Source: Auanema rhodensis
Lineage: Eukaryota > Animalia > Nematoda
Reading direction: 5' to 3'
Length of the DNA: 64,000 bases
NCBI GenBank assembly: GCA_964057225.1
Contig: OZ059897.1
Span: 10,416,001 to 10,480,000, forward strand
The position numbers and the translations under genes are program-made. This document shows positions 18,701 to 46,006 of this stretch, one piece after another. The stretch's first letter is position 1. Every line of letters starts with the position of its first letter. Under the pieces are notes generated by a model. It was given only the letters and a program-made list of their open reading frames with translations. It was not told the DNA's origin and did not search any database.

Positions 18701-19077
18701 CTTGTCATGTTAGATTTGTTTAATTTAAATACTTATTCAAGTTCCAACAATTTTCGATTAAATCACGTTCAATTAACTGTATTGTTTTCAAAAATAAAGA
18801 CAAAATTCAACTTCTGTTCATTGAATTAGAATTTTCATGTTGTCACACAGAAATTGAAGAATCTTAGTTCATTTCAGTAACAATGAACACACTAACTTTG
18901 TTAAGTTGTTGTAATATCGGCCCAAGTAGTATAGTGATTAGTACTCCACGTTGTGGCCGTGGCGACACAGGTTCGATTCCTGTCTTGGGCATTTTTTGTT
19001 TTGAAATTTAAATGCTATGAAATTATTGCTTGCTTGTCATGTTAGATTTGTTCAATTTAAATACTTATTTAAGTTCC

Positions 19078-19133
19078 CGTTCCATTATGGCTCTAACCCT
19101 GCAGTTACATATATAGGGTCTCCGAATGGAACG
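19078..19133 (-). repeat. Gypsy 3' LTR, internally deleted (56 bp)
   Basis: Equals the first 11 bp (CGTTCCATTAT) plus the last 45 bp (GGCTCTAACC...AATGGAACG) of the 366-bp LTR at 30470-30835. Confidence 0.92.
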
Positions 19134-19145
19134 TGCCCTTTTTCA
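19134..19145 (-). promoter_or_regulatory. Polypurine tract of the Gypsy element
   Basis: Minus strand reads GAAAAAAGGGCA immediately before the 3' LTR. Confidence 0.75.
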
Positions 19146-19830
19146 AAGATTGTCGCGACCTCGCGATATTTTAAACAAAAGTTTGGGCTTATATGTAACT
19201 GAGTTTTAGAGTTTAAATGTTTCAGCTTCACAATAACTATAGTATGATAGAGTTTTAATTAGTATAAAAACAAAATTACAATAATTCATAAGAAGTGTTC
19301 AATATAATATGAAGTGACGATGAATTAGAATATTATTAATTTCATAAATTAATTATCTCAATATTCAAGCATTTCTTAATAGAGATTGTAGAATAAGGGG
19401 CTAGTAATGAATGGGAATATGTTATTATTTTGACTAATGGTCTCAAGAAGTACTCATTTCTAAATTGAACCGAGATTATGATTTAATAATGTGTCTCAAT
19501 ATGTCTCCCAGAGTGAATCCTTGATTACTAATAGAGACTACCACTTAAGATGAAATTGTGGTTGATACGCCTACCAGTGTTTATCTCATCTTATTTGGAG
19601 AGGCACATGGAGCTCGGATGGTTGTCAAAATGTCCTCTAGTCCGCATAGGATTACGGTAACTTGGAACCATTAGTCATAACATCTCCTCGTTAAGAATTT
19701 GCCTTATTTTTCCTTTCTCAATCTCTATTAAATGCTATTTTTATTTTGAATGTTATTTAGCATAAATTTTTTTTTCTAATTCATCGTTATTTTGTTACAA
19801 TAATTTGAATAACGTAGCATTATCTTGTTG

Positions 19831-22800
19831 TTATTCTTCTTCATTCCTCGGAAGCCATATTTCGTCTTCATTTTCATCTTCTGGCTCTGTATCTTTGCTA
19901 TCCTTGTTGTTCCTGTTGATCACTTCTATTATTTCGATGTCGCTATCTTCTTCTGCTTGACTTTCTCGAAATCTTGCGCGAGTGTTGTAAGAGATGTTTT
20001 GTGAAGCAGGAGAGAAGATTTTCAAGTTATTTTTGTGGATATCTTGTAGTTTTCCTGATGAATTTCTGATTTGAACTTTTGATCCTTCTACGTCGATGAC
20101 TTCGTATGGTCCATCATAGCTTTTCCGAAGCTTTTGGCCGATTTGGTGTGATTTTATAGTCGTCATCACCATGTCGCCCGGTTGAATGTCTCTATGGTGT
20201 GCTCTTTGCGTTCTATCTTTCTTCTTTTTCGCATTTTCTTGATTTTTAGCTATGCGGTTCTTTATTATTTCGTCTCTCTTGTCCATATCTGGTCTTCTTT
20301 GGAGTAATTCTTCAGAAATTTCTTGAATTTTGGTGATCGTTTCTGGTAATTCAGCGTCCATTGACATTCTGCATTCTTTACCGAATAATGCAATGTATGG
20401 CGCAATCCCTGTAGTCGCGTGCTGAATATTGTTAATAACAAAAGTGATTTTTGGTAATACAGTATCCCAGTCACTAAGGTCCTCTTTTAAGTAGTGGGTT
20501 AATTCTTCTTCGAGGGTTCTGTGAAGTCTTTCCACTTGTCCATTTGAGTTCTTTTGGTGTGGTAGTGTTGGTTCATGTTTGATTCCAAGTTTAGTACACA
20601 TTTCTTCGAACTTTTTAGATACAAAGTTCGAACCTCTATCGGTGATCAAGCAATGGGGTGGTCCAAAAATGTAAACGAAATGTCTTAGAAATCGGTCAAT
20701 TGTGATTTCCGTTGTTATTTGTGGTACAGCAATTGTTGTTGACCATTTTGTAAATGCGTCTTGCATGGTAATGACGTAGGTACAGTTTCTTTTTGAAGGG
20801 GGAAATGGTCCCATTACGTCCATGTGGACTCGTTCAAATGGCTTGCTTGGTATCTCAAAATGACCTATTGGTTGTACCGTCATGGAATGTGGATCTTTTT
20901 TTCTTTGAGCACATTTAATGCAGTTTTTGATAAATATAGTAATGTCGTTCTGCATATTTGTCCAATAGAATCTTTTTAGAATTGCTTCTTTTGGTTTAAT
21001 AATTCCTTGATGTGCTGCAATTGTAGGATCCTCATGAAAAACTTTGATTATTTCCTCAATTATGGGGTGTTCTTGTGGTATTACGATAGCGGGTTGTGGC
21101 TTTTTGTCTGTTGGTTTTGTATAGAGCAAGTCATTTATGACACAATATCTGTCATTAGCTGTCATGTTCTTTTGTGCTCTATATTCAATCTCCGCTATCG
21201 TCCGTTTTATCCAAGGGGTGTTTAGTTGAATTTTCTTTATTGTTGGTGTATTTATGGCGTTAATGTGAATTTCTTCCATTTTCTTCTTCTTTGTTACCGG
21301 CTTAGCATCGTTAGCTTCTTCACCTATATATCGAGATAGAGCATCGCATACTTTATTTAATTGGCCTGCGCGATATTTTATTTCAATATCATATACTTGG
21401 ATGACCAGCTGGAACTTCGCAAGACGACCAAATAAGTCTCTGCGTGTCATTAAGCTGGTAAGGGGTCGATGGTCCGTAATACATATAGTATGAGTTCCAA
21501 GAATGTATGTACGGAATTGATTTAATGCATATACAAGGCCTAATGCTTCTATCTCGATTGGTGCGTAGTTACGTTCGGCTTTAACTAGTTTTCTGCTTGC
21601 AAATGCGATAGGGTGTAGATTTTTCAGAGGCTGTTTTGGATCTTCCGGTTGTAATAATACAGCACCTATGGCGATGTTACTACCGTCGCTTTCAACTATA
21701 AACAAGCGGTCCGATTTAGGTGGGCTTAAAACGGGTGCCTGTATTAAACTTCTTTTAAGGAGGTCTAAAGCTTCTTTATGTTTGTGTTCCCATTTGAATT
21801 CAGTATCTGCCTTTGTCAGATCGTATAAAGGGCTTGCGATACGTGCAAAATCTTTCATGAATTTGCGAAAAAATCCAACCATTCCCAAGAATGCTCGTAC
21901 ACCTGTTGCATTCTTTGGTGCCGGATAATCTTGTATGGCGGCGACTTTTTGAGGGTCAGGTTTTATACCTTGACGTCTTACAATAAGTCCTAGAAATTTC
22001 ACTTCTGGTTGAGCAAAAGCGCATTTCTTAAGCTTTATCTTCATTCCCAATTCTTCTACTGCTTGCAGTAAATCATCGATATCTTTGAGATGTTGTTCTC
22101 TTGTATCAGATATAACTAATAGATCGTCCAAATAAACAAATAGTTTACAAGAACATTTACTTTGCAAATACCTTACTGCTGTTTGAAAGGTATGAGGGGC
22201 TCCACAAAGGCCTATCGGCATCCGTTTGTACTGGTATGTGCCGGATGTGGTCGTAAATGCTGTTAGTGGTCGATCTGATTTTCTCAAGGATATTTGAAAA
22301 AATCCTGACACTAAATCGAAGTTTGAGAAAAATTGGGCGCCTGCTGCCAAATCAACTATGTCAGAAATGCTTGGAATGACATAAGTTTGCTTGCGTGTGA
22401 CATTATTTAAAGCTCGAAAATCTGTCACAAACCTATACGTGTCATCTTTCTTCTTAACTAGTACTACAGGGCTATTAAATAGAGATGTAGAAGGCTCTAT
22501 TATGCCTTGCTCAAGCATTTCTTTGACTTGTTTTTCAATTTCTTCCTGTTTTCCTAAGGGAATACGTGTTATTCTCGGCTTTGGCATATCCATATCTGTT
22601 CTCAATGGTATGGTATGCTCAATAGGACCTTTAAATAAGCCTATTTTCCTGTCCTCGTTAAGAAATGCCTCACGATGGTTTTCAATTATTTTTGTAAGCT
22701 CGTGTTTTTCTTCTTTCGTGAGATCAGCATTCTCTAGATCAAGATCTTTTATGAAGTCTCTTGGAAAATATGGTAGTTTACTCTCCCAATCGGCTTCTGG

Positions 22801-24294
22801 CGGAACATATGGTAAAATTGGCTTATGCTTAAAGGGTTCACAAGCCGGAATTTCTCCAATTATTGCCTGTCCGATGACTGAATTAGCTTCCATAGCTATT
22901 GATACATCGGTATCGTTACGGAACATAACATATACTCCACTGGTATCACGAAACGCAGTTGGATATAATGATTTTAATGCGCTTCCACTATCCCTTAAGA
23001 CAACCACTTCGTTAGATTCTAGTGGTTTATCTGTTTTTATTGGGATAGGTGCCTCTTCATCAGGCTTTAATGTTTTTGTTCTTAAATTAATGATATTCAC
23101 AGTTATCTCCGTATGCTTAATAGATTCATTTCCTATTAATGGGATGGCATTGTTTCCAATCTCCAACCTCTTCTTGGATGGTTTAAGGCTGACGTCGATG
23201 TTTTCGCTGTCAAGCGCTTTCATGAAATCTAGTCCACTTAAAGCAGGAGCAGGACAGTCATGATCGTTTGAGACCAAAAAGGTGTGTTCGATCTCGTAGC
23301 CGGCAATTTCAATTACAAGATTTATCTTTCCATAAAATGTGAAAGTGGACTTGTTGGCTGCCATCGCTACTAAATGTCTCTTCTTGACATTTTCGGCCAT
23401 GTTCAGATATTTGAGGATGGAGAGCCTAACATATGACACTGATGAGCCTGAATCCCATAAAGCTAAAATCAGTTTATCTTCAACTGATATATATATTAAT
23501 GGTAACTTCGTTTCCGCTGATGCAATAGAAGCAACAAATGGTATTGCGATTGGAATAAATGTTACTAAAGCAGGATAGTATTGCTTCATGATGTTATCTG
23601 GCATCTGTTGGTCTGGGCGGCTTACAAGTTCCAATGTTTCTTCATAGCCTGGGGGCTCATTATCTATTTCGTGGACATGCATTACGGTTAGTGGAGTGGC
23701 TCTGAAGAACCAAAATTTAGCAACAACGAAAAGAATTATTAATACTGCGGCAATCGTAACCATTGATCCTATGAAGATGAGTGTTCTCTCAATTGATCCT
23801 ATCAGAAATTGCTTTACGCTAGTCCAGGCGGAAGTTGTGAACTCAGCTGCTTTAGAGATATAGTCACTGCCCTTTTTCAAAAGGTTAAAGGCTGACGTAA
23901 TTTTTGGATCGTTGTGAATAGTATGTAAAACATGGTTCTGTCGTATGGATGCTAAACTTGCTCCATATGCAATAGCTGTTGACATTGAGTAAACTCTCAA
24001 TGATAAATTGGTGTATAAGTTAGCGCCTGTGAACTTTAAAGATGTTAATTGGTGGTATTGCGCTTTATCAAAGAGTGATATTGGTTTTACTTCAACCGAT
24101 CCATTCATATTTATCCATTCTCCATTTTGATAGTACACATCTGTTGGTACATGTTCGCAATCTATCTCTTTTCCATCTGTTAATAAGTCTCTTGATCCTG
24201 GAGCAGCAAAATATAATCTCTCATCTTCTGTTATTACTGGTGTTTCCAAATAGCATGTATCATTGATCTTATGATTATGATAAACAGCTTTAGG
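19831..24294 (-). CDS. pol: Polyprotein, distal part: Env C-terminus and TM anchor, aspartic protease, RT, RNase H, DDE integrase
   Basis: TM LIFIGSMVTIAAVLIILFVVAKFWFF; PR LWDSGS; RT YRFVTDFRALN and YLDD; RH ESDGSNIAIGAVL and TDHRPL; IN H..H..CIKC, HMDVMGP, TDRGSNF, NGQVER, DGPY. The frame stays open up to 24294; the track start at 24249 is TTG, not a true start. Confidence 0.95.
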   Translation of the reverse strand, partial: PKAVYHNHKINDTCYLETPVITEDERLYFAAPGSRDLLTDGKEIDCEHVPTDVYYQNGEWINMNGSVEVKPISLFDKAQYHQLTSLKFTGANLYTNLSLRVYSMSTAIAYGASLASIRQNHVLHTIHNDPKITSAFNLLKKGSDYISKAAEFTTSAWTSVKQFLIGSIERTLIFIGSMVTIAAVLIILFVVAKFWFFRATPLTVMHVHEIDNEPPGYEETLELVSRPDQQMPDNIMKQYYPALVTFIPIAIPFVASIASAETKLPLIYISVEDKLILALWDSGSSVSYVRLSILKYLNMAENVKKRHLVAMAANKSTFTFYGKINLVIEIAGYEIEHTFLVSNDHDCPAPALSGLDFMKALDSENIDVSLKPSKKRLEIGNNAIPLIGNESIKHTEITVNIINLRTKTLKPDEEAPIPIKTDKPLESNEVVVLRDSGSALKSLYPTAFRDTSGVYVMFRNDTDVSIAMEANSVIGQAIIGEIPACEPFKHKPILPYVPPEADWESKLPYFPRDFIKDLDLENADLTKEEKHELTKIIENHREAFLNEDRKIGLFKGPIEHTIPLRTDMDMPKPRITRIPLGKQEEIEKQVKEMLEQGIIEPSTSLFNSPVVLVKKKDDTYRFVTDFRALNNVTRKQTYVIPSISDIVDLAAGAQFFSNFDLVSGFFQISLRKSDRPLTAFTTTSGTYQYKRMPIGLCGAPHTFQTAVRYLQSKCSCKLFVYLDDLLVISDTREQHLKDIDDLLQAVEELGMKIKLKKCAFAQPEVKFLGLIVRRQGIKPDPQKVAAIQDYPAPKNATGVRAFLGMVGFFRKFMKDFARIASPLYDLTKADTEFKWEHKHKEALDLLKRSLIQAPVLSPPKSDRLFIVESDGSNIAIGAVLLQPEDPKQPLKNLHPIAFASRKLVKAERNYAPIEIEALGLVYALNQFRTYILGTHTICITDHRPLTSLMTRRDLFGRLAKFQLVIQVYDIEIKYRAGQLNKVCDALSRYIGEEANDAKPVTKKKKMEEIHINAINTPTIKKIQLNTPWIKRTIAEIEYRAQKNMTANDRYCVINDLLYTKPTDKKPQPAIVIPQEHPIIEEIIKVFHEDPTIAAHQGIIKPKEAILKRFYWTNMQNDITIFIKNCIKCAQRKKDPHSMTVQPIGHFEIPSKPFERVHMDVMGPFPPSKRNCTYVITMQDAFTKWSTTIAVPQITTEITIDRFLRHFVYIFGPPHCLITDRGSNFVSKKFEEMCTKLGIKHEPTLPHQKNSNGQVERLHRTLEEELTHYLKEDLSDWDTVLPKITFVINNIQHATTGIAPYIALFGKECRMSMDAELPETITKIQEISEELLQRRPDMDKRDEIIKNRIAKNQENAKKKKDRTQRAHHRDIQPGDMVMTTIKSHQIGQKLRKSYDGPYEVIDVEGSKVQIRNSSGKLQDIHKNNLKIFSPASQNISYNTRARFRESQAEEDSDIEIIEVINRNNKDSKDTEPEDENEDEIWLPRNEEE

Positions 24295-26580
24295 TTAAAG
24301 AGGTAGGCATATATGAACATGAACTATATCGCTGCCTACGAAACGGGCTGCAATATCCTCTCTTCCTAAAATAGTCCTCATTGCTATTGTGGGTTCTATG
24401 TGTAAAATAGAACGCCATAGCTCGAGGTATCTATTTTGAATCTCACATATGGATTTATAAGATTCCATAAAATGTTTCTGTAGCTCTTCTTGTATGAGTG
24501 TTGTTATATATTGTAGATGATCTTGAGCTATTCTGCGAGATACGTTGAGGTTGAATTGTATTTCGTTGTTCACTTTTGACGCTGTATACGTTGCCTGAGC
24601 CTGAATTTCTCTGGTTTCTACGGGTGGAGATGATGTTCTTTGTTTCCTTAAGGTTCGTGACGCCGTGTCAGTGACTGTTGCTAGTGTTGTTGGCAAGAGA
24701 GTCGTAGTTATCACGGCTGTTGTCGTGTCAACTGTGGTTGTCGTCGGAATCCGAGTCGTATAGCTTATAGTTGTCTCCTGAACTAGTGAAGCGGGTTTGT
24801 CCATTGTTGTCGTTAATGACAGTCTTCTAGTCAGATAAGGCGGTGTTTCAATATTCTCTAACAGTGGTAAAAATGTTTTTATAAGTAGCTGGCGTGTATC
24901 CGCGCTTGGAGTTTGAATGCGAGGGTGGGGGCCTATCGATATACCGTAGTTAGAATCTTTATCTCGATATAGTTTGTTGGTATCTGGCACATTGATTGTT
25001 AATTGTCGGAACTTTTCATCATCTACGGCTGCTGCTGTTTTATTCGGCCTTATTACTCGCAATGTCATCAAGTTATGGTATAAGTAAAGAGTATTTCTAA
25101 GTACTATACGCTCATCAGCATTGTCAGTTGTTAAAGTTGGTCGGATAGGCGGCATGTTCACAAAGGATTTTAAAACCTCTTGCTTTGATGGTACCGACAG
25201 ATTGTTTTCAAATATTACCGGTGTATAAGCTAGCTCCATCGCTATGCTTTTGGCTCTTTCACGGTAGGATCCGTCCTTTTCTAGTAGTTGTTCGTCAAAT
25301 TCGTGTGATGTTAATCTGTCACCTATCTGTTCTAATAATTGTTTTGAGGTTAAATACCGTATAGCGCCGCGAGTGGTTGCTGCCAGTTCCTTTTGCGCAA
25401 GAAAATAAAGTATTGCTTCCTCAGGGTCGTGTATTTCGTATGTTTGAAGGAAACGTTGTATGGATTTATCAGATACGGGACTTCTTAAGAAGAAATAAAA
25501 CTTCTCGGGATGTGCTGAAACCCAATCAATAATTGAATATGAAGGGTTGACAGCTCGTCTGGCCTTTATAAGCGGTATTATCTGATAAATACCAGGATTA
25601 CTCATCACCGGTCGTAAGAAAGGATAAGGACAAATATTTAATATTAAAGTTTCAAAATCTTCCTGTTTTTGTATCCACTCCTTGTTTAATTCAACCGTGC
25701 ATTCCGCAATTGCTCTTTTATCTCTTTTCGCCGGAAGTTTCTTATATTCTCTCTCTATTAAAACATGGATATTGGTGTCATTTGGGTACTGTGGTAAGAG
25801 AATGTAATTGCCAGTTGTGGTGTGGAAGATTAACTGTTTAAAACAAGAAGATATTTGCTTCGGTATCTCTTTTTGATCTATTACAAGGGCTGATTGAGTG
25901 GTTGGTAACAGAATAATGCCGTCTCCAATTATCGCATCATATTCACTCATGTCGATATATTTGCATCGATATTCATAAGGCTGTTTCTCCCATATGATGA
26001 TTGAGGTATCTGATGCACATTCTCCATGATGCGCTAAGCATCCTTCAGTATTTAGTATTAAATTGGAGATTATAGTTTCATCTGGCATCCGTGTCATAAC
26101 CCCTCTTTCGATAACCAATCTGGCTTTCTCTTTACATAGTTCATTATTAAAAGATCGGCCTGGCGAGAAGGAAGGCTCGTCAGTTGCATATGTTATGCTG
26201 TCGATCTTCTTTAATTCACTCCAATTCCATCTTCTATCTCTCACTGCCAGTCTGCATTCTGCAGCTGGTATCTTTTCAATTCTCACTATCGTTGTATTGG
26301 TATCTCTAAGGAACAAAAGGTCTCTGATACACATTTTATGAATTTCTTTGGAGCATCTCCATGCATCCCATTCATGTGCCGTTTGATTCCTTGTATAAAG
26401 ATGAACTTTTGTTCGTAAGATATGCTTTATTGGTGGTAATAAGCATTTTCGGAGAGATGGGGGACGGAGAAGGGCTCCTCCAGTAGCTTTAGTACATAGC
26501 TGGTATGCTTCAGCTGTTGTAACCAGTGATAAGATTACTGATAAAGCTACGGCTAAAGTCAAAGGAGATATCAGAGTCAA
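23700..26580 (-). other. env: Env domain: class III fusogen (herpes gB / chuvirus G-like) spanning the in-frame stop
   Basis: Signal peptide ~26505-26580, furin site 25714-25728, gB domain III/IV-like motifs (CEIQN..., AARFVG...C.P, CYLETPV), TM ~23705-23785. Confidence 0.8.
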
Positions 26581-28536
26581 ATTATTGACTCTTGAGCCTC
26601 TACCTCTGCCTCTATTGTTGTTATTTCCCCTAAAGGTACTGTTATTTCTCTGTCTATTATTGCTCATTTCTTGATTTTGTGATGCATTGTGGCTTCTTTG
26701 ATACCCATTTTGATTTTGATTCTGATAATTTCGACCGCAGTCACCAAAATTGCGGTTCCTAGCAAATGGGTTTTGGAAATTCCAGCCTTTTTTATTTTTT
26801 GAAAATTTATGATAATTTTGATTGTTTTGAAAGTTTGGATGATAATTGTTATAATTATTATAATTTTGATAATTTTTATTATTAAAAGATTGATAACCTC
26901 TTGCCATACCTCTCCCACCATTGTTTCTGCGTGGGGGGAAAGTTCTTTCAATTGCGTTAACCAATAGCGCCTGAGGGTCTGCTACTTGGTTTGCAATTGA
27001 TTCCACCCAGCGAGCACTATCAACAGCCTCAGCAAAAGTTTTGGGTTTTGCTCGAATTACCCCTGGGCGTATCGTATTTTTCAAGCCTCTCAAAAATGTG
27101 GACCTCAGAATGTGATCTTTAAGAGTATCACTATTAGAGAAAGCATTTAAGCTGAGGTTTCTTAACGTTTGTGCGAAACCATCAATTGATATATCGCCTT
27201 GAGTGCTGTTTTGAAGTGTGATAAGAGCTGGGTCTTGATTGTATTCGGGACACAGCTTGGATGTTAACTCTTCTATTAGGGTAACCCAAGGTCCAGCTGT
27301 TCTGACCTTGTCAGGTAGCTCTAAATAAGCTTCCTCTGCTCTATCATTTTTCAATAGTAATGGTAAAATAGTTAGTCTTTCGGGCATCACTAAGCCTAAG
27401 GCGTTAGAAAAGGTATTAAACTTTGCCACGAAATCTCTAAAGTTACGACTTCCGTCGTATATGGGGCAATAAGGTGAGCTTAATGCGTGCGCAATGGTAG
27501 ATTTACCAGCTCCCGGAAGACGTGGTGTCTCCGTCATGGTTGGTATATTTTCAGGGTATGTGTGAGATGACGTAATCCCTTTACTGCCTGAGCTTCTCGC
27601 CGTTAAATTCTCACCTCCCTTTTTCGAGTTACCAGATGTTGGATAACTAATGGTAGGGGCGGCTGAGGAGAACCGCTTCCCTGGGAGTTTGATAACTCGA
27701 CTCGTTGCCTGAGGCGTCGAATGTATTGAAACGCTTGAGCTGGGTATAGCGCTATCTGACTTATTAAGGGTTGGGTTGGAGGATACGTGAAGAGAGTTAT
27801 CAACTTGTTCTGTTGTTACCTCCCCTGGAGACAAATTCAAAACTTTTATTAAGCGAGCTGTTAAAGATTTCTTACTTTTGAACTTATCAGTAGTTAGTGA
27901 TAAGGGCAAAACTTCGGTAATTTCCTGATTTGGTTCTACGGGATTATTAGAGGTTGAGCGCCTACGCGGTGTATTAGTTTTTCTTTTATTAATCTTTTTA
28001 GAATCAAGCTTTTTCGAATCAAGCTTATCAGTGATAACTGATAAGGGTGATTTGCGAATAGTGAGAGATGAGGTTTTATTAAGTTGTGAGTTTTCTATCG
28101 GAGTGGAAAATGCCTGCGGTGTTAGAGTTAGTTCAAAAGAAGATGCAAGATCGTTATCAGTATTAATTGATAAAGTTGATAAGTTTAGGTGGGGGGTGGC
28201 TGGTGAAGTATTAGAGGTTATTTGTTTTGGTTTTCGAATTTTTTGAATCTTCTTATTACTTTTAAAAGAGTGTACCTTTGGAGTTGAAGCTGAAGTTTGA
28301 ATATTGTAGTCCTGAATATAGAAATCAGGGTCCTCCTCGGTGTTGTCCGGAGGTGAATACGTGCCTTCTCGAGGAATGAAGGTTTTCTCGACTTTGGGTT
28401 TTACCTCTTGTTCAGGCTCTTCAATCTGAACACTGAGGAGTCGAGTGCGGCTTCTGGTTCGACTGGCGACTGCGATGTCGTCAGTGGACTCAGAAGGGTA
28501 TAGAGCAGGGACGGCCGAAGAGTATCTTCGTGCCAC
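24295..28536 (-). CDS. gag-env: Polyprotein, proximal part: S/T/K-rich leader, Gag, signal peptide, gB-like glycoprotein ectodomain
   Basis: Gag capsid-like CPIYDGSRNFRDF...FLRGLKNTIR...PKTFAEAV; N/Q/R/G-rich tail; hydrophobic LTLAVALSVILSLVTTAEA; Cys-rich ectodomain; furin site KRDKR; gB-like CEIQNRYLELW...GREDIAARFVG. Confidence 0.88.
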   Translation of the reverse strand: MARRYSSAVPALYPSESTDDIAVASRTRSRTRLLSVQIEEPEQEVKPKVEKTFIPREGTYSPPDNTEEDPDFYIQDYNIQTSASTPKVHSFKSNKKIQKIRKPKQITSNTSPATPHLNLSTLSINTDNDLASSFELTLTPQAFSTPIENSQLNKTSSLTIRKSPLSVITDKLDSKKLDSKKINKRKTNTPRRRSTSNNPVEPNQEITEVLPLSLTTDKFKSKKSLTARLIKVLNLSPGEVTTEQVDNSLHVSSNPTLNKSDSAIPSSSVSIHSTPQATSRVIKLPGKRFSSAAPTISYPTSGNSKKGGENLTARSSGSKGITSSHTYPENIPTMTETPRLPGAGKSTIAHALSSPYCPIYDGSRNFRDFVAKFNTFSNALGLVMPERLTILPLLLKNDRAEEAYLELPDKVRTAGPWVTLIEELTSKLCPEYNQDPALITLQNSTQGDISIDGFAQTLRNLSLNAFSNSDTLKDHILRSTFLRGLKNTIRPGVIRAKPKTFAEAVDSARWVESIANQVADPQALLVNAIERTFPPRRNNGGRGMARGYQSFNNKNYQNYNNYNNYHPNFQNNQNYHKFSKNKKGWNFQNPFARNRNFGDCGRNYQNQNQNGYQRSHNASQNQEMSNNRQRNNSTFRGNNNNRGRGRGSRVNNLTLISPLTLAVALSVILSLVTTAEAYQLCTKATGGALLRPPSLRKCLLPPIKHILRTKVHLYTRNQTAHEWDAWRCSKEIHKMCIRDLLFLRDTNTTIVRIEKIPAAECRLAVRDRRWNWSELKKIDSITYATDEPSFSPGRSFNNELCKEKARLVIERGVMTRMPDETIISNLILNTEGCLAHHGECASDTSIIIWEKQPYEYRCKYIDMSEYDAIIGDGIILLPTTQSALVIDQKEIPKQISSCFKQLIFHTTTGNYILLPQYPNDTNIHVLIEREYKKLPAKRDKRAIAECTVELNKEWIQKQEDFETLILNICPYPFLRPVMSNPGIYQIIPLIKARRAVNPSYSIIDWVSAHPEKFYFFLRSPVSDKSIQRFLQTYEIHDPEEAILYFLAQKELAATTRGAIRYLTSKQLLEQIGDRLTSHEFDEQLLEKDGSYRERAKSIAMELAYTPVIFENNLSVPSKQEVLKSFVNMPPIRPTLTTDNADERIVLRNTLYLYHNLMTLRVIRPNKTAAAVDDEKFRQLTINVPDTNKLYRDKDSNYGISIGPHPRIQTPSADTRQLLIKTFLPLLENIETPPYLTRRLSLTTTMDKPASLVQETTISYTTRIPTTTTVDTTTAVITTTLLPTTLATVTDTASRTLRKQRTSSPPVETREIQAQATYTASKVNNEIQFNLNVSRRIAQDHLQYITTLIQEELQKHFMESYKSICEIQNRYLELWRSILHIEPTIAMRTILGREDIAARFVGSDIVHVHICLPL

Positions 28537-28946
28537 TTTGGAATCACTCTTGGTTTGGAAAAACCGCGAGTGTTTCGTTATATGGGGGATGTTGACGTTG
28601 AATGAGTGACAAGAAATTCAGGTCGGTTATAGGGAAAAGTAAGAAAAGTTTGAAGATTGAGACGTGGCGTTTTTCGCCGAGAATCGTTATTAGATGAGAA
28701 AGAGTTTTAAAATCTTGGCCTGAGATCTGGCTCCGCCTATCTACCGTATTCTCTTTTCTTTATTCTTTTTTTCACAGATATTCATCAATTATAAATTTTG
28801 TTGGTCTTCGCTCTTTCCAGCCTCAATCTTAATACTTTACTCTAATTGAATTCTTGAAAATATGAGAGAGATTTTCAGTCGTTTTAAGTCCTCTTTTTAT
28901 GCATAAGAATCTTTATATTTGTAGAGCTGAAAAAAAAAATCAAAGA

Positions 28947-29480
28947 ATGGCTTATGAAGGTCTATCGGGAATGACTTTTGTCGTGAGGAAGCTGTACGCT
29001 GACCTCGTCTTGTATGATCAAGACGAAGTGTTAGCTTATAGGCCGCACCCAGACATAATTAAGATGGTTGGTTAAAACAAAGAAACATGTTATGTTAATA
29101 AGAATTTTTAGTTTATAGAGGATTTAAAGATGCATTATCTGGGAAGGGGATTAGTAAACTTCTCCCTAATGCAGGAAATAGCGGATGAGGTTGCAGCTAT
29201 CCGGCGATGGTGCCTCACCGACTTGTGCGCGCATTGGTATGAAAACCCTAATCTAGTCGCATCCCCTTGGAATTGGTATGAGCATAAGTCTCATGATTTT
29301 TATGATTATATGTCTAAAATTTTGTTTAAAATTTATTTGTTTTATGAACAGTCTCCTATGGGCTTATTGCTAAGGACCTCTGCGGATTCAGTGTATTCGC
29401 AGTATTTAGAGCCTAGCGATGAGCCCATCTCACAGCCTATAGAATTTGTGAGACAGTTGCATTTTAAATGGGGCTTTTAA
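28947..29480 (+). CDS. Putative two-exon antisense accessory gene (~162 aa, unknown function) in the Gypsy leader
   Basis: Exon 1 28947-29066 (ATG GCT TAT..., 40 codons); 45-nt intron GTTGGT...TTTTTAG 29067-29111; exon 2 29112-29480 in frame with the 116-aa track ORF; AATAAA at 29497-29502. Confidence 0.65.
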
Positions 29481-29523
29481 CAATTGTTTTATATATAATA
29501 AATACTTAATTTCACTCATTTGT

Positions 29524-29543
29524 TCTCTCTCTCTCTCTCTCTC
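29524..29543 (+). repeat. (TC)n microsatellite
   Basis: Run of about 10 TC units downstream of the antisense gene. Confidence 0.8.
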
Positions 29544-30456
29544 TTTTTCTTTTTCATAACACAAACTTTGGTCGAGCTTATTAATAAAGAAGGAGTGCGT
29601 GCGCCTTGGGAAAATGGCTCATGTGCACGTTGATTATTAAAAGCCGTGGGCGATTCTTTTCCGGAATGATTTTGGCATGCTAATGAGATTCCGAGAATAT
29701 TTAAAAAGATTGCTCATTTTACTAATGGACTGAGACCAAAGCTCGTTTATAAAACGCAATTTTTTTCTTTAAACCATTTTACTAATTTATAGAATATTAC
29801 AATATGAAGACTACGGTAGGTGTGTGGGAATATCTTATGATGTTAGCAACAAAAATGAGCTGAGGAAGGTGACACATTCTACGGAGAAGAAAACATCCGT
29901 AGCCCATGTGCTTTCGCCAAAATGACCTGACAGGCAATAAAATTTGTGCCAGGATTTTTCGGACTAGTGTGGTCTATTCTCACAATCAAAAAAAAAATAA
30001 ATACCGAATAACGGCTCCCGCAAAAATATTTAGTTAGCATGCTCTTTTACGCCTGAATTTAACTTTCAAATCTCTAGTCCTGACCACAATAAAATATTAA
30101 ACTTTGTGCGCTTTCAAAATTTCATTCTAACTCCTCGTTGCCAAATAATAATGAAATCAAAATTTCGTTTGGTGAAATTGTCCCCTATTTCAATCCAAAC
30201 GTCCTCAAAAAAAATGCAAGAGAAGCGGTGCAGGATACGGTATTATAAGGGTGGACACTCAGACGGTTTTATGAGTGGGGACAGCGGGTAAAATTTCAAA
30301 ATTATATAGTCCTAGCTCTCTAAAAGAGAGATCCCTTGTACCTGCACCTTATACAAGTTGGCGCCCTCATTATGTTGCTAACCGTGGAGGAAATTTTAAT
30401 TTAGATATCAAAATATGGACTTTTTATGCGAGTTTTTGCGACAAAAATGAGTTCGA

Positions 30457-30469
30457 GGTGGAACCTCCA
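30457..30469 (-). promoter_or_regulatory. Primer-binding site complementary to the tRNA-Gln 3' end
   Basis: Minus strand TGGAGGTTCCACC abuts the 5' LTR and matches the eukaryotic tRNA-Gln 3' end GGTGGAACCT-CCA. Confidence 0.85.
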
Positions 30470-30835
30470 CGTTCCATTATGCTCCTACGTATATTGAACA
30501 GACCATTGTAGTCTGCTCAACTACGCGTATAGTATTCCATAAGTGTAGCGGTATGGAAACAGAGCATAAGGATTACATAAGATTAGGAAATAAATAGGTT
30601 TATTATACACAATACAATATCATTACAATACAATAACACAAGGATAAAGTAAACTACATTTACAAGACAAAGACTAATATATAAGATTAACTAAGTTAGG
30701 TGCAAACCGTCCATGGGCTTGCGAAGGGGCGAACTCCCGAATAGGGGCATGAGGGAAGGCGGTGCCATTCCTCATTTCTCTAGTCGGTCTGGCTCTAACC
30801 CTGCAGTTACATATATAGGGTCTCCGAATGGAACG
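30470..30835 (-). repeat. Gypsy 5' LTR (366 bp)
   Basis: 9-bp terminal inverted repeat CGTTCCATT/AATGGAACG, bounded by the PBS and the TSD; TATA-like (~30676-30685) and AATAAA (~30599-30604) on the minus strand. Confidence 0.92.
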
Positions 30836-33800
30836 TTCCAACAATTTTCGATTAAATCACGTTCAATTAACTGTATTGTTTTCAAAAATAAAGACAAAAT
30901 TCAATTTCTGTTCATTGAATTAGAATTTTTATGTTGTCACACAGGAAATGAAGAATCTTAGTTCATTTCAGTAACAATGAACACAATAACTTTGTTAAGT
31001 TGTTGTAATATCGGCCCAAGTAGTATAGTGGTTAGTACTCCACGTTGTGGCCGTGGCGACACAGATTCGATTCCTGTCTTGGGCATTTTTTGTTTTGAAA
31101 TTAAAATGCTATAAACATATTGCTTGCTTGTCATGTTAGATTTGTTTAATTCAAATACTTATTTAAGTTCTAACAATTTTCAATTTAATCACGTTCAATT
31201 AACTGTACTGTTTTCAAAAATAAAGAAATCTTTCAATTTCTGGTCATTGAATTAGAATTTTCATGTTGTCACACAGAAATTGAAGAATCTTAGTTCATTT
31301 CAGTAACAATGAACACACTAACTTTGTTAAGTTGTTGTAATATCGGCCCAAGTAGTATAGTGGTTAGTACTCCACGTTGTGGCCGTGGCGACATAGGTTC
31401 GATTCCTGTCTTGGGCATTTTTTGTTTTGAAATTTAAATGCTATAAAAATATTGCTTGCTTGTCATGTTAGATTTGTTTAATTCAAATACTTATTTAAAT
31501 TCCAACAATTTTCGATCAAATCACGTTCATTTAACTGTATTGTTTTCAAAAATAAAGACATCTTTCAATTTCTGGTCATTGAATTAGAATTTTCATGTTG
31601 TCACACAGAAATTGAAGAATCTTAGTTCATTTCAGTAACAATGAACACACTAACTTCGTTAAGTTGTTGTAATATCGGCCCAAGTAGTATAGTGGTTAGT
31701 ACTCCACGTTGTGGCCGTGGCGACACAGATTCGATTCCTGTCTTGGGCATTTTTTGTTTTGAAATTTAAATGCTATGAAATTATTGCTTGCTTGTCATGT
31801 TAGATTTGTTTAATTCAAATACTTATTTAAGTTCTATCAATTTTCGATTTAATCACGTTCAATCAACTGTATTGTTTTCAAAAATAAAGACATCTTTCAA
31901 TTTCTGGTCATTGAATTAGAATTTTCATGTTGTCACACAGAAATTGAAGAATCTTAGTTCATTTCAGTAACAATGAACACACTAACTTTGTTAAGTTGTT
32001 GTAATATCGGCCCAAGTAGTATAGTGGTTAGTACTCCACGTTGTGGCCGTGGCGACACAGGTTCGATTCCTGTCTTGGGCATTTTTTGTTTTGAAATTTA
32101 AATGCTATAAAATTATTGCTTGTTTGTCATGTTAGATTTGTTTAATTCAAATACTTATTTAAGTTCTAACAATTTTTAATTTAATCACGTTCAATTAACT
32201 GTATTGTTTTCAAAAATAAAGACAAAATTCAATTTCTGTTCATTGAATTAGAATTTTCATGTAGTCACACAGAAATTGAAGAATCTTAGTTCAATTCAGT
32301 AACAATGAACACACTAACTTTGTTAAGTTGTTGTAATATCGGCCCAAGTAATATAGTGGTTAGTACTCCACGTTGTGGCCGTGGCGACACAGGTTCGATT
32401 CCTGTCTTGGGCATTTTTTGTTTTGAAATTTAAATGCTATAAAATTATTGCTTGCTTGTCATGTTAGATTTTTTTAATTTGAATACTTATTCAAGTTATA
32501 ACAATTTTCGATTTAATCACGTTCAATCAACTGTATTGTTTTCAAAAATAAAGACATCTTTCAATTTCTGGTCATTGAATTAGAATTTTCATGTTGTCAC
32601 ACAGAAATTGAAGAATCTTAGTTCATTTCAGTAACAATGAACACACTAACTTTGTTAAGTTGTTGTAATATCGGCCCAAGTAATATAGTGGTTAGTACTC
32701 CACGTTGTGGCCGTGGCGACACAGGTTCGATTCCTGTCTTGGGAATTTTTTGTTTTGAAATTAAAATGCTATAAAATTATTGCTTGCTTGTCTTGTTAGA
32801 TTTCTTTAATTTGAATACTTATTCAAGTTATAACATTTTTCGATTTAATCACGTTCAATCAACTGTATTGTTTTCAAAAATAAAGACAAAATTCAATTTC
32901 TGTTCATTGAATTAGAATTTTCATGTTGTCACACAGAAATTGAAGAGTCTTAGTTCGATTCAGTAACAATGAACACACTAACTTTGTTAAGTTGTTGTAA
33001 TATCGGCCCAAGTAATATAGTGGTTAGTACTCCACGTTGTGGCCGTGGCGACACAGATTCGATTCCTGTCTTGGGCATTTTTTGTTTTGAAATTAAAATG
33101 CTACAAAATTATTGCTTGCTTGTCATGTTAGATTTCTTTAATTTGAATACTTATTAAAGTTATAACAATTTTCGATTTAATCACGTTCAATCAACTGTAT
33201 TGTTTTCAAAAAAAAAGACATCTTTCAATTTCTGGTCATTGAATTAGAATTTTCATGTTGTCACACAGAAATTGAAGAATCTTAGTTCATTTCAGTAACA
33301 ATGAACACACTAACTTCGTTAAGTTGTTGTAATATCGGCCCAAGTAGTATAGTGGTTAGTACTCCACGTTGTGGCCGTGGCGACACAGGTTCGATTCCTG
33401 TCTTGGGCATTTTTTGTTTTGAAATTTAAATGCTATAAAATTATTGCTTGCTTGTCATGTTAGATTTGTTTAATTCAAATACTTATTTAAGTTCCAACAT
33501 ATTTCGATCAAATCACGTTCATTTAACTGTATTGTTTTCAAAAATAAAGACATCTTTCAATTTCTGGTCATTGAATTAGAATTTTCATGTTGTCACACAG
33601 AAATTGAAGAATCTTAGTTCATTTCAGTAACAATGAACACACTAACTTCGTTAAGTTGTTGTAATATCGGCTCAAGTAGTATAGTGGTTAGTACTCCACG
33701 TTGTGGCCGTGGCGACACAGATTCGATTCCTGTCTTGGGCATTTTTTGTTTTGAAATTAAAATGCTATAAACATATTGCTTGCTTGTCATGTTAGATTTG

Positions 33801-36599: not shown

Positions 36600-36951
36600 T
36601 GTGGCGTTATACCACAAGTGTATAGTATGGTTGGAAGTAAAACACAGAGCGAATATGTAGAAAAGGGTTTATTGATGAATTAACAAGACAAGCACGGAAT
36701 AAAATCACTGACTGCGAACGTTGAAAATGTAAGACTGATCTCTTCTCGTGGGCGGTCGTCAGCCTGAAACAAAGAGTTAGTCATGCCACATGTATAACAC
36801 AACATGTGGTATGGATAAAAATTACTTAGGAAGTTAGAAGAAAGAAGAAAGAAGAGAGAGAAAGAAGAGAGAGAGAGAGAGAACAGGAGAAACAAATAAA
36901 ACAATTGTTGAAGATAAAAAAATTATACAAACTCACTCGCTTATCGCGACA
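36600..36951 (-). repeat. BEL/Pao 3' LTR (352 bp)
   Basis: TGTGGCG...CGCGACA, near-identical to 46007-46360; contains a GA-rich microsatellite. Confidence 0.95.
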
Positions 36952-36981
36952 CTCCCAGCAATGCGGGAATGAGAAGAAGGC

Positions 36982-37494
36982 CTACAAAGGTCTTTTACGT
37001 TTTATATCTCCACAAACCACTCCATGATGCGTATCCGCCTTACATCTATAGCAGGATACCTCGCATATCGCTGGATGTTTTTGATTCAAACATCTGATGC
37101 ATAACCCCAGTTCATGAAGACGGAGAGTGCGTTCCGGTGAGGAAGGATAAATCGGACAGGCCGCAGTACGGTGCCCATCAGCTGTCGGTTTATTGCAGAA
37201 TACACATGAAGCTTTAGGAGCAGTCTGAATGGTCAAATTGTCTAGTTTCAGATTTAACGAATGTTGAATATTGTCCAGTCGTTCGGATAGATGGTTCACC
37301 GCGCTAGCTAGGTGCTCGTAGAGCCTCTTTTCAAGCACAATTAGTTGCCTCAGATTGGCAGCAGTGTTAGGTAGATGGGAATATTTTTTGAGCTCTTCCT
37401 CAAAGGAAGCATTCTCAATTATATTCGAGACTATATCTTCCATTTTCATGGAATATAGGAAAGACATGAGCTGCATCCTTATATACATGTTCAC
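36982..37494 (-). CDS. Accessory ORF or exon downstream of env: coiled coil plus Gag-like triple Cys/His knuckle
   Basis: CVFC..GHRTAAC, CIRCLNQKH...C and CYRC...HHGVVC; preceded by a possible splice acceptor GTCCAG at ~37497-37502. Confidence 0.75.
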   Translation of the reverse strand: MNMYIRMQLMSFLYSMKMEDIVSNIIENASFEEELKKYSHLPNTAANLRQLIVLEKRLYEHLASAVNHLSERLDNIQHSLNLKLDNLTIQTAPKASCVFCNKPTADGHRTAACPIYPSSPERTLRLHELGLCIRCLNQKHPAICEVSCYRCKADTHHGVVCGDIKRKRPL

Positions 37495-37885
37495 ATCTGG
37501 ACTTTAAACGCTGATTATCATCTATTAGTTCATTGTACAATGGTGTGTTTAGGTTATCTTGTTACAGATACAATGAATTTTAGAGCCTGTACAAAAGGTT
37601 ATGTGTTATGTAACTGAGTTGGATAAAAAAAACTTGATACTACCATAAATTGAAAAGAAAGAAAAACTATGATATTGTTTTATTACAATGGTTATATTCG
37701 TACATAATGCTTTCTTTTTCTTTTGTTTCATTATTATTTCAATTTTCAATTTTAAATTTTATCTCCACAAGAAATTCTTCTCTTATGCTTTTAAAATCTT
37801 TGATCCAGAAATAAGGCTTTTGATTTTATCCACAGTGTGAATATCCTGGTAGCTATCCATTGTGTGGTTAAGACTGTATTCAAAA

Positions 37886-46003: not shown

Positions 46004-46006
46004 ATT

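What the first reader, a model, noticed from the sequence alone, without database searches (positions are those of the whole stretch)
19831..28536. Gypsy element with Gag-Env-Pol order: a gB-like class III fusogen embedded between gag and pol in one reading frame
Seen: after Gag comes a signal-peptide-like stretch, a Cys-rich ectodomain with a furin site, a TM anchor, and only then PR-RT-RH-IN, all in one frame. Known: retroviruses, errantiviruses and env-bearing BEL/Pao elements place env after pol. The segment CEIQNRYLELW...GREDIAARFVGSDIVHVHICLP..CY..PV resembles, from recall, herpes gB WCELQN.EL.LW...[20 protein letters not shown]..CYSRP. gB-like env is known from the Ascaris Tas element (BEL/Pao). 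Inference: an independent env capture in a Gypsy lineage, giving a polyprotein that threads the ER membrane with Gag and Pol cytosolic and Env lumenal, i.e. a candidate infectious endogenous virus with a distinctive genome plan. I cannot confirm it is undescribed.
Basis: partly seen in the sequence, partly recalled or inferred. Interest (0 to 1): 0.95.

Follow-up and report, generated by a model that had tools for sequence, protein, structure and literature searches.

The report
Nematode Gypsy retrovirus with internal envelope
This is a slightly damaged copy of an already described kind of nematode endogenous retrovirus, in which a herpes-gB-like membrane-fusion protein sits between gag and pol in one reading frame; it is real, but not a new genome plan.

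Summary
On the minus strand, one frame is open for 2,901 codons with a single internal stop. The other two frames carry 227 and 238 stops. The frame reads Gag, signal-like segment, Cys-rich ectodomain with a furin-like site, transmembrane anchor, then PR-RT-RH-IN.

The middle part is a class III fusogen:
- A 57-sequence family profile hits about 54 herpesvirus gB chains (best E 1.2e-15).
- An AlphaFold model (pLDDT 79) gives only gB in the top 50 PDB matches (best E 1.1e-12).
- It also matches nyami-, chu- and rhabdo-like virus G proteins.

It is a true LTR element of about 11.76 kb. It has a 5-bp target duplication, a 365-bp 5' LTR and a 55-bp 3' LTR remnant.

The architecture is a clade trait, not a one-off. 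The closest pol relatives (44-62% identity) are all rhabditid nematode proteins with the same order. Two relatives carry it as uninterrupted genomic ORFs.

The plan is published: Sacco et al. 2022, and Chary & Hayashi 2026, who report gB-type ENV in GAG-ENV-POL order in nematodes.

This copy is defective: one stop in env, one large deletion in the 3' LTR, and no ATG at the head of the frame.

Extras: an orphan all-alpha insert in env, and a host locus that is a tandem tRNA-His gene array.

The parts
19073..19077 (.). Left copy of the 5-bp target-site duplication (GTTCC) in the 332-bp host repeat
   Evidence: The host repeat stops here and resumes at 30835 with the same 5 bases. Joining the flanks minus one copy gives the intact repeat unit. 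Bounds are uncertain by about 2 nt.
19078..19132 (-). 3' LTR remnant, 55 bp, with one large internal deletion relative to the 5' LTR
   Evidence: its first 12 and last 45 bases are identical to the two ends of the 365-bp LTR.
19136..19144 (-). Polypurine-tract-like run (GAAAAAGGG on the minus strand), 3 nt inward of the 3' LTR
   Evidence: Read directly. Position and composition only; function is inferred.
19831..23502 (-). pol: PR (23140-23502, DSG), RT (21982-22458, YLDD), RNase H (21391-21792), integrase zinc finger plus core (20557-21063), then a C-terminal tail ending at the stop codon. No stops or frameshifts.
   Evidence: RVT_1 4.8e-32, RT_RNaseH_2 6.2e-28, rve 2e-14, Integrase_H2C2 4.4e-13, all nearly full-length profile matches. 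One search gives the motifs.
23503..23709 (-). Cytosolic tail between the env anchor and PR. It holds a PPxY motif (PPGY, 23644-23655) and a second, weaker, proline-rich hydrophobic stretch.
   Evidence: The Auanema relative has PPSY at the same place and two other relatives have PSAP.
23710..26589 (-). env, a class III fusogen, broken once by an in-frame stop with no frameshift. Sub-features: signal-like segment 26503-26589; beta-rich Cys domain 25726-26502; furin-like RDKR 25714-25725; all-alpha insert 24832-25713; Ser/Thr-rich disordered linker 24622-24831; long central helix 24367-24621; TM anchor 23710-23781.
   Evidence: Pfam, (Glycoprotein_B 5.8e-7, Monjiviricetes_fusion 4e-4, both below the curated cut-off). 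PDB, (29 of 29 hits are gB). Profile, (gB 1.2e-15). AF2. Foldseek. Conservation. Collinearity with the Auanema protein across the stop.
26590..28536 (-). gag. It has a disordered N-terminal extension (27538-28536) that is open but lacks an ATG at its head. The capsid-like core and an N/Q/R/G-rich basic tail with no CCHC knuckle run from the first in-frame ATG (27535-27537) to 26590.
   Evidence: Ty3_capsid 0.0014, Retrotrans_gag 0.013. (family profile hits dArc2, PNMA2 and Arc capsids, 3.5e-4 to 9e-4). (30 relatives with this capsid piece upstream of env). (0 stops in the extension against 15 and 39 in the other frames).
28537..30451 (-). Long leader of about 1.9 kb with no minus-strand ORF. 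It contains a (CT)n run.
   Evidence: Pfam finds nothing in its ORFs and Rfam finds nothing.
30452..30469 (-). Primer-binding-site-like sequence starting TGG directly after the 5' LTR
   Evidence: Read. It is not complementary to the local tRNA-His. The cognate tRNA was not identified.
30470..30834 (-). 5' LTR, 365 bp, with 8-nt terminal inverted repeats (GTTCCATT / AATGGAAC)
30835..30839 (.). Right copy of the 5-bp target-site duplication (GTTCC)

Best explanation
The region is one copy, about 11.76 kb on the minus strand (19078-30834), of a Ty3/Gypsy-type endogenous retrovirus. It belongs to the nematode clade whose genome plan is LTR-gag-env-pol-LTR, with all proteins in one reading frame.

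Shown here:
- The env is a class III fusion glycoprotein, homologous to herpesvirus gB and to the G proteins of nyami-, chu- and rhabdo-like viruses.
- It sits between a Ty3/Arc-type Gag and PR-RT-RH-IN.
- It begins with an internal signal-like segment and ends with one TM anchor.
- The same order, signal and anchor recur in relatives from at least eight named rhabditid species. Two relatives carry it as uninterrupted genomic ORFs.

Inferred mechanism:
- The full-length RNA is translated as one polyprotein.
- Gag is made in the cytosol.
- The internal signal sends the next roughly 900 residues into the ER lumen, where signal peptidase cuts after the small-x-small motif.
- The TM anchor stops transfer, so the tail and PR-RT-RH-IN return to the cytosol.
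- A furin-like protease cuts the ectodomain at the conserved R-x-K/R-R site, as in many gB proteins.
- The element's own protease frees Pol from the env tail.

This topology works like that of a flavivirus or pestivirus polyprotein. It would let a single-ORF element express an envelope without splicing.

This copy cannot do that. Env carries one in-frame stop, the 3' LTR has lost most of its length in one deletion, and the frame has no ATG at its head. It is nevertheless young. What remains of the two LTRs is identical, and 8.7 kb of frame holds only that one stop.
For: - Frame statistics.
- Domain calls.
- gB homology: 29/29 PDB hits are gB, best 0.0019; profile of 57 relatives, about 54 gB sequences, best 1.2e-15, plus rhabdovirus-type G at 1e-4 to 1e-3.
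- Pfam over 55 relatives: 33 match Monjiviricetes_fusion (best 2.6e-20) and 25 match Glycoprotein_B (best 7.6e-11).
- Fold: (pLDDT 79; beta-rich domain above 90; an 85-residue helix); the top 50 PDB hits are all gB, E 1e-12 to 2e-9, about 400 aligned columns; viral G and gB, best 5.5e-14.
- Element bounds, target duplication and LTRs.
- Clade-wide architecture: (160 relatives); 36 have Gypsy pol after env, 12 have gag-env-pol in one protein, and only 1 has Gypsy RT before env; the closest pol relatives, 44-62% identical, are all nematode. Every one of the best 12 that reaches upstream of PR shows env (10 of 12); six aligned proteins show the complete order.
- Uninterrupted genomic ORFs: L001, Auanema, and L002, 2,493 codons.
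- Topology conservation. In 18 of 19 relatives there is exactly one hydrophobic segment between the ectodomain and PR.
- Furin-like site: 29 of 43 relatives at that column, against 0-2 of about 52 at control columns.
- Ten ectodomain Cys are conserved in 74-100% of relatives.
- Literature: PMC13524379.
Against: - The window's own env scores below Pfam's curated cut-offs (29.6-31.2 bits against 43 for Glycoprotein_B). Family membership therefore rests on the relatives' profile and on the predicted fold.
- TM-scores are low (0.2-0.3). The model is a monomeric fragment with a 290-residue insert.
- Polyprotein translation, the cleavage sites and trimer formation are inferred from sequence only. 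No transcript or protein data were available.
- A second, weaker hydrophobic stretch before PR would put Pol on the wrong side if it spanned the membrane. It is proline-rich and absent from the Auanema relative.
- The PBS-like sequence could not be matched to a tRNA.
- The host species is unknown. 'Nematode' is inferred from the relatives.
Confidence: 0.88

Rival explanations
1. One-off chimera: an unrelated env-bearing sequence was nested into an ordinary Gypsy copy, or the assembly joined two elements. On this reading the gag-env-pol order is an accident of this locus.
For: Only the general rarity of env upstream of pol, together with the unequal LTRs.
Against: The same order in the same frame is found in many independent nematode proteins. 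It is also found in two uninterrupted genomic ORFs from other sources. Pol and env relatives coincide: the closest pol proteins are the env-bearing ones. There are no internal LTRs or duplications around env.
Confidence: 0.02
2. Same element, different expression. Env is made mainly from a spliced or subgenomic RNA, as in retroviruses and Drosophila gypsy. The open frame through gag-env-pol would then be tolerated rather than used as one polyprotein.
For: A 1:1:1 output of Gag, Env and Pol is unusual for retroelements. Nematodes splice and trans-splice widely (general knowledge). The 1.9-kb leader leaves room for splice donors.
Against: Frame continuity across both junctions is kept in distant relatives, which argues for selection on read-through translation. 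The env signal-like segment follows Gag directly, with no intervening stop or start context. One TM between the ectodomain and PR is conserved in 18 of 19 relatives, as a threaded polyprotein needs.
Confidence: 0.2
3. The env-like segment is a host-domesticated fusogen gene, or a relic with no envelope role, that merely lies beside retroelement genes.
For: Class III fusogen genes have been captured by other nematode mobile elements, namely Mavericks (bioRxiv 10.1101/2022.07.12.499685, listed).
Against: The segment lies inside the LTR-bounded element, in frame with gag and pol. Cys pattern, furin-like site, signal and anchor are conserved across element copies from many species, as expected of an element-encoded envelope. 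In this copy it is broken.
Confidence: 0.03

Closest known systems
Nematode endogenous retroviruses with gag-env-pol order (Sacco et al. 2022, J Gen Virol 103:1739; 'ancient errantiviruses' of Nematoda in Chary & Hayashi, eLife 2026, PMC13524379)
   Same: Ty3/Gypsy pol, with an HSV/gB-type class III env placed between gag and pol. The ectodomain is flanked by a signal (or first TM) and a TM. Relatives are nematode.
   Different: Nothing in kind. This copy adds a roughly 290-residue all-alpha insert shared only with Auanema relatives, a long leader, and damage (one stop in env, a deleted 3' LTR). The 2026 paper treats the genes as three ORFs and does not discuss one continuous frame. The 2022 paper could not be read here.
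Herpesvirus glycoprotein B (Pfam PF00606; many PDB entries, e.g. 9mw5, 2gum, 5cxf)
   Same: Class III fold, long central helix, internal furin-type site after the first two domains, and a C-terminal anchor. Profile E 1.2e-15; Foldseek E 1.1e-12.
   Different: About 10% identity in the structural alignments. The window's own score is below Pfam's cut-off. The protein is encoded inside a retroelement polyprotein and has an extra helical module.
Glycoproteins of nyami-, chu- and rhabdo-like negative-strand RNA viruses (Pfam PF24664 Monjiviricetes_fusion)
   Same: This is the Pfam family matched by most relatives (33 of 55, best 2.6e-20). It also gives the top predicted-structure hits (Beihai rhabdo-like virus 3, Nyavirus).
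   Different: Those are free-standing genes of RNA viruses. The direction and date of any transfer were not tested here.
BEL/Pao elements with class III env behind pol (Ascaris Tas, from the finding and my own knowledge; mosquito BEL/Pao with chuvirus-like G, Dezordi et al. 2020 as cited in PMC13524379)
   Same: The env family is homologous. P0087, P0048 and P0096 are Peptidase_A17 polyproteins that end in this env.
   Different: They belong to a different superfamily (Peptidase_A17, DUF1759 gag), and env follows integrase rather than preceding protease.
Drosophila gypsy and other insect errantiviruses
   Same: Ty3/Gypsy elements that carry an envelope gene.
   Different: The order is gag-pol-env. 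Most have an F-type (class I) env made from a spliced RNA (general knowledge; PMC13524379).
Flavivirus and pestivirus polyproteins (resemblance in mechanism only)
   Same: A cytosolic capsid is followed by an internal signal sequence, lumenal glycoprotein(s), a stop-transfer anchor and cytosolic enzymes, all from one ORF (general knowledge).
   Different: There is no homology. Here the enzymes are PR-RT-RH-IN and the topology is predicted, not shown.

Membership tests
Ty3/Gypsy (Metaviridae) LTR retroelement | pol domain order PR-RT-RNase H-IN with Gypsy-type RT and integrase | tested here: met
   (all four above Pfam cut-offs, in that order). (760 Gypsy-type relatives at E<=1e-30).
Ty3/Gypsy (Metaviridae) LTR retroelement | Gag with Ty3/Arc-type capsid | tested here: met
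   The window's own sequence is weak (Ty3_capsid 0.0014). The family profile hits dArc2, PNMA2 and Arc capsids at 3.5e-4 to 9e-4. There is no CCHC knuckle.
Ty3/Gypsy (Metaviridae) LTR retroelement | Direct LTRs flanked by a short target-site duplication | tested here: met
   5-bp duplication and exact empty-site logic. The 5' LTR is 365 bp. The 3' LTR is a 55-bp remnant identical at both ends.
Ty3/Gypsy (Metaviridae) LTR retroelement | tRNA primer-binding site and polypurine tract next to the LTRs | tested here: inconclusive
   A TGG-starting sequence abuts the 5' LTR and a purine run lies 3 nt from the 3' LTR. No matching tRNA was available.
Nematode GAG-ENV-POL errantivirus-like ERVs | gB-type env between gag and pol of a Gypsy element | tested here: met
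   Definition taken from PMC13524379.
Nematode GAG-ENV-POL errantivirus-like ERVs | Closest pol and env relatives are nematode elements with the same order | tested here: met
   Species named: Auanema sp. JU1783, Caenorhabditis auriculariae, C. remanei, C. nigoni, C. brenneri, C. japonica, Diploscapter pachys, Heterorhabditis bacteriophora, Oesophagostomum dentatum, Acrobeloides nanus.
Nematode GAG-ENV-POL errantivirus-like ERVs | Placement inside the published POL tree clades; nematode host | not tested
   The published sequences and supplements were not held, and the origin of the window is not given.
Class III viral fusion glycoproteins (gB / G / gp64) | Class III fold | tested here: met
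   Foldseek PDB: the top 50 are all gB, prob 1.00, about 400 columns. BFVD: G proteins and gB. The model covers only the part upstream of the stop.
Class III viral fusion glycoproteins (gB / G / gp64) | Long central helix followed by crown and membrane-proximal parts and a C-terminal TM anchor | tested here: met
   An 85-residue helix in the model. The family profile aligns to HCMV gB from domain II through the anchor (7kdd). TM. The downstream piece matches Monjiviricetes_fusion at 4e-4.
Class III viral fusion glycoproteins (gB / G / gp64) | Trimer with bipartite internal fusion loops; membrane-fusion activity | not tested
   Only a monomer fragment was modelled. Activity cannot be read from sequence.
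Herpesvirus gB family in the strict Pfam sense (PF00606) | Score above the curated gathering cut-off | tested here: not met
   29.6-31.2 bits against 43. It is therefore a distant homologue within the class III superfamily, not a herpesvirus gB.
BEL/Pao env-bearing elements (Tas-like) | Peptidase_A17 protease, DUF1759 gag, env after integrase | tested here: not met
   None of these is present in this element. All are present in the neighbouring element B and in P0087, P0048 and P0096.

The most novel reading that the evidence does not exclude
Two readings are not excluded.

(a) In this clade the single continuous gag-env-pol frame is the obligatory way of making all proteins. The polyprotein would be threaded through the ER membrane, with Gag in the cytosol, Env in the lumen and Pol in the cytosol. 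The literature I could read lists this as an ORF order only and does not analyse it as a mechanism.

(b) The roughly 290-residue all-alpha module inserted just after the furin-like site is a newly gained functional part of a class III fusogen, for example for receptor binding or shielding. It is shared only with Auanema relatives and has no PDB fold match.
Probability: 0.35. Interest if true: 0.5.

Novelty: new member of a known kind. Interest (0 to 1): 0.3.

Why it matters
The finding confirms, from raw sequence, that retroelements can carry an envelope gene inside the gag-pol polyprotein. It adds a young, nearly whole example to a clade that bears on how retroelements gained and kept fusogens. 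The value is in annotation and comparison rather than discovery, because the genome plan and the env type are already in print.

Three points may repay further description:
- the conserved signal/anchor topology across relatives
- the orphan helical insert in env
- the setting, in which two envelope-bearing elements of different superfamilies and fusogen classes lie inside one tandem tRNA-His gene array

Tried and rejected
- The genome-contig scan with pol found nothing. That collection holds only bacteria and archaea, so the blank says nothing.
- The default repeat search found no LTRs. They emerged only from reading the junctions and from blastn, because the 3' LTR is a short remnant.
- The first pol homology search drew its words from the env/PR end and gave only distant Gypsy hits. 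Repeating it on RT-IN gave the nematode clade.
- Exact look-ups of P0070, P0025, P0009 and of element B's gag found no contigs.
- Sacco et al. 2022 is not held, nor are the eLife supplements. No other held paper cites the 2022 paper.
- Rfam found nothing in the element. Pfam found nothing in the leader ORFs or in the Gag N-terminal extension.
- The helical insert, folded alone (pLDDT 74, pTM 0.73), has no PDB match (best E 0.12).
- The downstream env piece alone has no PDB sequence hit.
- The PBS-like sequence does not fit the local tRNA-His.
- A literature search on tRNA arrays and nematode retroelements gave nothing relevant.
- I considered programmed read-through of the env stop and rejected it. 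The stop lies inside a conserved folded domain. The Auanema relative is collinear there, with the same spacing and an open frame.
Full report
**Setting.** The window has GC of about 0.30 and is made almost entirely of a 332-bp tandem repeat, with two islands of GC about 0.38. The repeat is not an anonymous satellite. Each unit holds a tRNA-His(GTG) gene. ARAGORN finds 128 copies, all on the plus strand. Rfam's tRNA model scores 64-67 bits against a threshold of 29. Each gene is followed by a T-run. The finding lies in the first island.

**The observation.** On the minus strand between 28536 and 19831 there are two very long ORFs in one and the same frame, separated by a single stop.
- Over the 2,901 codons that frame has 1 stop. 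The other two frames have 227 and 238.
- From base composition, the chance of even the shorter open run is below 1e-40.
- In reading order, the frame holds a disordered N-terminal stretch and a capsid-like region. An N/Q/R/G-rich basic region without a zinc knuckle follows, then a 29-residue hydrophobic segment ending in a small-x-small motif.
- Next comes a Cys-rich ectodomain with R-D-K-R, a strong TM segment, a tail, and then DSG (protease) and YLDD (RT).
- Pfam confirms RVT_1 (4.8e-32), two RNase H models (about 1e-27), Integrase_H2C2 (4.4e-13) and rve (2e-14) in the Gypsy order.

**Is the middle part a class III fusogen?** The evidence is as follows.
- By itself, the part of env upstream of the stop matches Pfam Glycoprotein_B at E 5.8e-7. 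The part downstream matches Monjiviricetes_fusion at 4e-4. Both are below the curated cut-offs.
- Against all PDB sequences, every one of its 29 hits with E<=1 is a herpesvirus gB, aligned on the central-helix region. The best is 0.0019.
- An exhaustive HMMER search of 1.84 billion representatives found 160 relatives at E<=0.001, of which 61 were at E<=1e-10.
- A profile of 57 of them hits about 54 distinct gB sequences in the PDB. The best is 1.2e-15, and one alignment runs from domain II to the anchor. Rhabdovirus-type 'Glycoprotein' chains follow more weakly, at 1e-4 to 1e-3.
- Of 55 relatives scanned one by one, 33 match Monjiviricetes_fusion (best 2.6e-20) and 25 match Glycoprotein_B (best 7.6e-11).
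- An AlphaFold2 model of the upstream part with that alignment has mean pLDDT 79. It shows a beta-rich domain above 90, a helical domain at 80-90, a disordered Ser/Thr-rich linker, and an 85-residue helix.
- Foldseek against the PDB returns only gB in the top 50, with E 1.1e-12 to 1.9e-9, probability 1.00 and about 400 aligned columns. TM-scores are low (0.2-0.3), as expected for a monomeric fragment with an insert.
- Against predicted viral structures, the best hits are G proteins of rhabdo-like and nyami-like viruses (5.5e-14, 2.3e-13), gB (3.4e-13), chu-like viruses and two entomopoxvirus proteins.
- Ten Cys of the ectodomain are conserved in 74-100% of relatives. An R-x-[KR]-R motif lies near the same alignment column in 29 of 43 relatives, against 0-2 of about 52 at seven control columns. 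That is the position of the furin site in many gB proteins (general knowledge).

The class III assignment is sound. 'gB-like' is fair, but the protein is at least as close to the G proteins of negative-strand RNA viruses.

**Is it a real element?**
- The host repeat stops at 19077 and resumes at 30835 with the same five bases, GTTCC. Removing one copy restores the intact unit.
- Inside the right-hand junction lies a 365-bp LTR (30470-30834) with 8-nt terminal inverted repeats. A TGG-starting PBS-like sequence follows it directly.
- Inside the left-hand junction lies a 55-bp remnant. Its first 12 and last 45 bases are identical to the two ends of that LTR. A purine run lies 3 nt before it.
- The element spans 19078-30834, about 11.76 kb.
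- Between the PBS-like site and the long frame lies a 1.9-kb leader without any minus-strand ORF.

- env: one in-frame stop, no frameshift. The spacing across it equals that of the open Auanema relative.
- pol: no breaks.
- gag: no stops or frameshifts. However, the open frame has no ATG at its head, and the first in-frame ATG is codon 334. Either the 333-codon extension is not translated from this copy or its start has been lost. The extension has 0 stops, against 15 and 39 in the other frames.
- 3' LTR: one large internal deletion.

The copy is defective but young.

**Gag.** The window's own sequence gives only weak Ty3_capsid (0.0014) and Retrotrans_gag (0.013) hits. Thirty relatives carry the same capsid piece upstream of env. 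A profile of 19 of them hits the capsids of Drosophila Arc2, PNMA2 and Arc, at 3.5e-4 to 8.9e-4.

**Is the order a one-off?** No.
- Among the representatives with an env match, 36 have Gypsy PR/RT/RH/IN after env. Twelve have capsid, env and pol in one protein. Only one has a Gypsy RT before env.
- Searching with RT-IN alone, the best hits (44-62% identity over up to the whole region) are all from rhabditid nematodes. They are Heterorhabditis bacteriophora, Caenorhabditis auriculariae, C. remanei, C. nigoni, C. japonica, C. brenneri, Auanema sp. JU1783 and Diploscapter pachys, with Oesophagostomum dentatum a little further off. Every one of the best 12 that reaches upstream of PR shows env (10 of 12). 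Env-less Gypsy proteins from other phyla start at about 40% identity or less.
- Six proteins show the complete order capsid-env-PR-RT-RH-IN.
- Two relatives prove that the order sits in one genomic frame and is not an artefact of spliced gene models. The Auanema contig L001 is one 5-kb ORF from gag through env and PR into RT. The Logan contig L002 has a single 2,493-codon ORF carrying capsid, fusogen, RT, RNase H and integrase.
- The closest env relative overall is the Auanema protein P0151, 46% identical over 80% of the query.

**Mechanism.**
- Shown: the position of the signal-like segment right after Gag recurs in 26 relatives. The anchor after the ectodomain recurs in 37 of 47. In 18 of 19 relatives that reach PR there is exactly one hydrophobic segment between ectodomain and PR, followed by a tail of 40-95 residues.
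- Inferred: a co-translationally threaded polyprotein, cytosolic Gag, lumenal Env and cytosolic Pol. The cuts would be by signal peptidase, by a furin-like protease and by the element's own protease. This is a topology like that of flavivirus polyproteins. It suits a lineage that encodes everything in one ORF, because no splice is needed to express env.
- The tail carries PPGY, and PPSY in Auanema. This may be a late-domain-like motif, but it is not general in the family.
- A second, weaker and proline-rich hydrophobic stretch before PR is a caveat for the topology in this copy.
- Whether a spliced env RNA also exists cannot be told from DNA.

**Comparison with what is known.** Chary & Hayashi (eLife 2026, PMC13524379) write that errantiviruses in Nematoda, Bryozoa and Platyhelminthes carry only HSV/gB-type ENV. 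They report the ORFs as arranged GAG-ENV-POL and the elements as forming several host-associated clades. They searched for this order because Sacco et al. 2022 had reported it in nematodes. They also describe gB-type ectodomains flanked by a signal peptide and a TM, or by two TMs, and a furin site that is not always kept. They do not discuss a single continuous frame or a polyprotein. From memory only, the 2022 abstract describes a continuous gag-env-pro-pol arrangement, but I could not read it. The genome plan and the env type are thus published. This is a further member.

The same env family also occurs behind pol in BEL/Pao polyproteins (P0087, P0048, P0096). This fits the Tas and mosquito cases named in the finding and in the paper.

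**Features beyond the published outline.**
1. A roughly 290-residue all-alpha module lies directly after the furin-like site and before the Ser/Thr-rich linker. It is found only in the window and in Auanema relatives. Modelled alone it has pLDDT 74 and pTM 0.73, with no PDB fold match (best E 0.12).
2. The host locus is a tRNA-His gene array.
3. A second, apparently unbroken, envelope-bearing element of another superfamily lies 6 kb away.

- While reasoning I began to write, from memory, an approximate pattern of conserved residues of the gB central helix.
- While reading the ORF tables I also worked out where the breaks lie and mused on the nature of one of them.
- That implicitly bounds the stop.

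None of this is repeated in this report. No repaired, joined or consensus sequence was built, and the consensus lines printed by the alignment tool were not used.

Noticed in passing
window 1-64000 (units of 332 bp; e.g. tRNA at 18920-18991): The 'satellite' that fills the window is a tandem array of tRNA-His(GTG) genes. There are 128 copies, all on the plus strand, each with a T-run terminator. Both retroelements sit inside it. Element A lies 86 bp after one tRNA and about 179 bp before the next. Element B ends about 64 bp before a tRNA. Whether this reflects targeting or tolerance is open.
   Followed up: partly
window 36600-46360, minus strand: A second LTR element, BEL/Pao type. Its LTRs are about 352 bp and 99% identical (36600-36951, 46007-46360). 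It has a DUF1759 gag ORF (44339-45718) and one 2,129-residue ORF (37886-44275) with Peptidase_A17, integrase and DUF5641. That ORF ends in Phlebovirus_G2 (3.9e-42) plus Phlebo_G2_C, a class II fusogen fused behind pol. This resembles what I recall of the Cer13 and hookworm 'Atlas virus' type.
   Followed up: partly
window 24832-25713, minus strand: A roughly 290-residue all-alpha module lies inside the env ectodomain, right after the conserved furin-like site. It is shared only with Auanema sp. JU1783 proteins (P0151, P0179, P0001, P0002, P0026, P0031 and others). It is confidently modelled (pTM 0.73) but has no PDB fold match.
   Followed up: yes
window 23644-23655, minus strand: A PPxY motif (PPGY) lies in the cytosolic tail just after the env anchor. 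The Auanema relative has PPSY at the same place and two other relatives have PSAP. This may be a budding (late-domain) motif placed in the Env tail/Pol leader rather than in Gag.
   Followed up: partly
proteins P0087, P0048, P0096: The same env family is also found at the C-terminal end of BEL/Pao gag-pol polyproteins. One fusogen family is thus used by two retroelement superfamilies at two different positions.
   Followed up: partly
window 28537-30451, minus strand: The leader between the PBS-like site and the long frame is unusually long, at 1.9 kb. It has a (CT)n run near 29527-29548, no minus-strand ORF, and no Pfam or Rfam match. Its role is unknown; it could hold splice signals or a decayed insertion.
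   Followed up: partly
window 26590-26860, minus strand: Gag has no CCHC zinc knuckle. In its place is an N/Q/Y-rich, RGG-like low-complexity basic region directly before the env signal-like segment.
   Followed up: no
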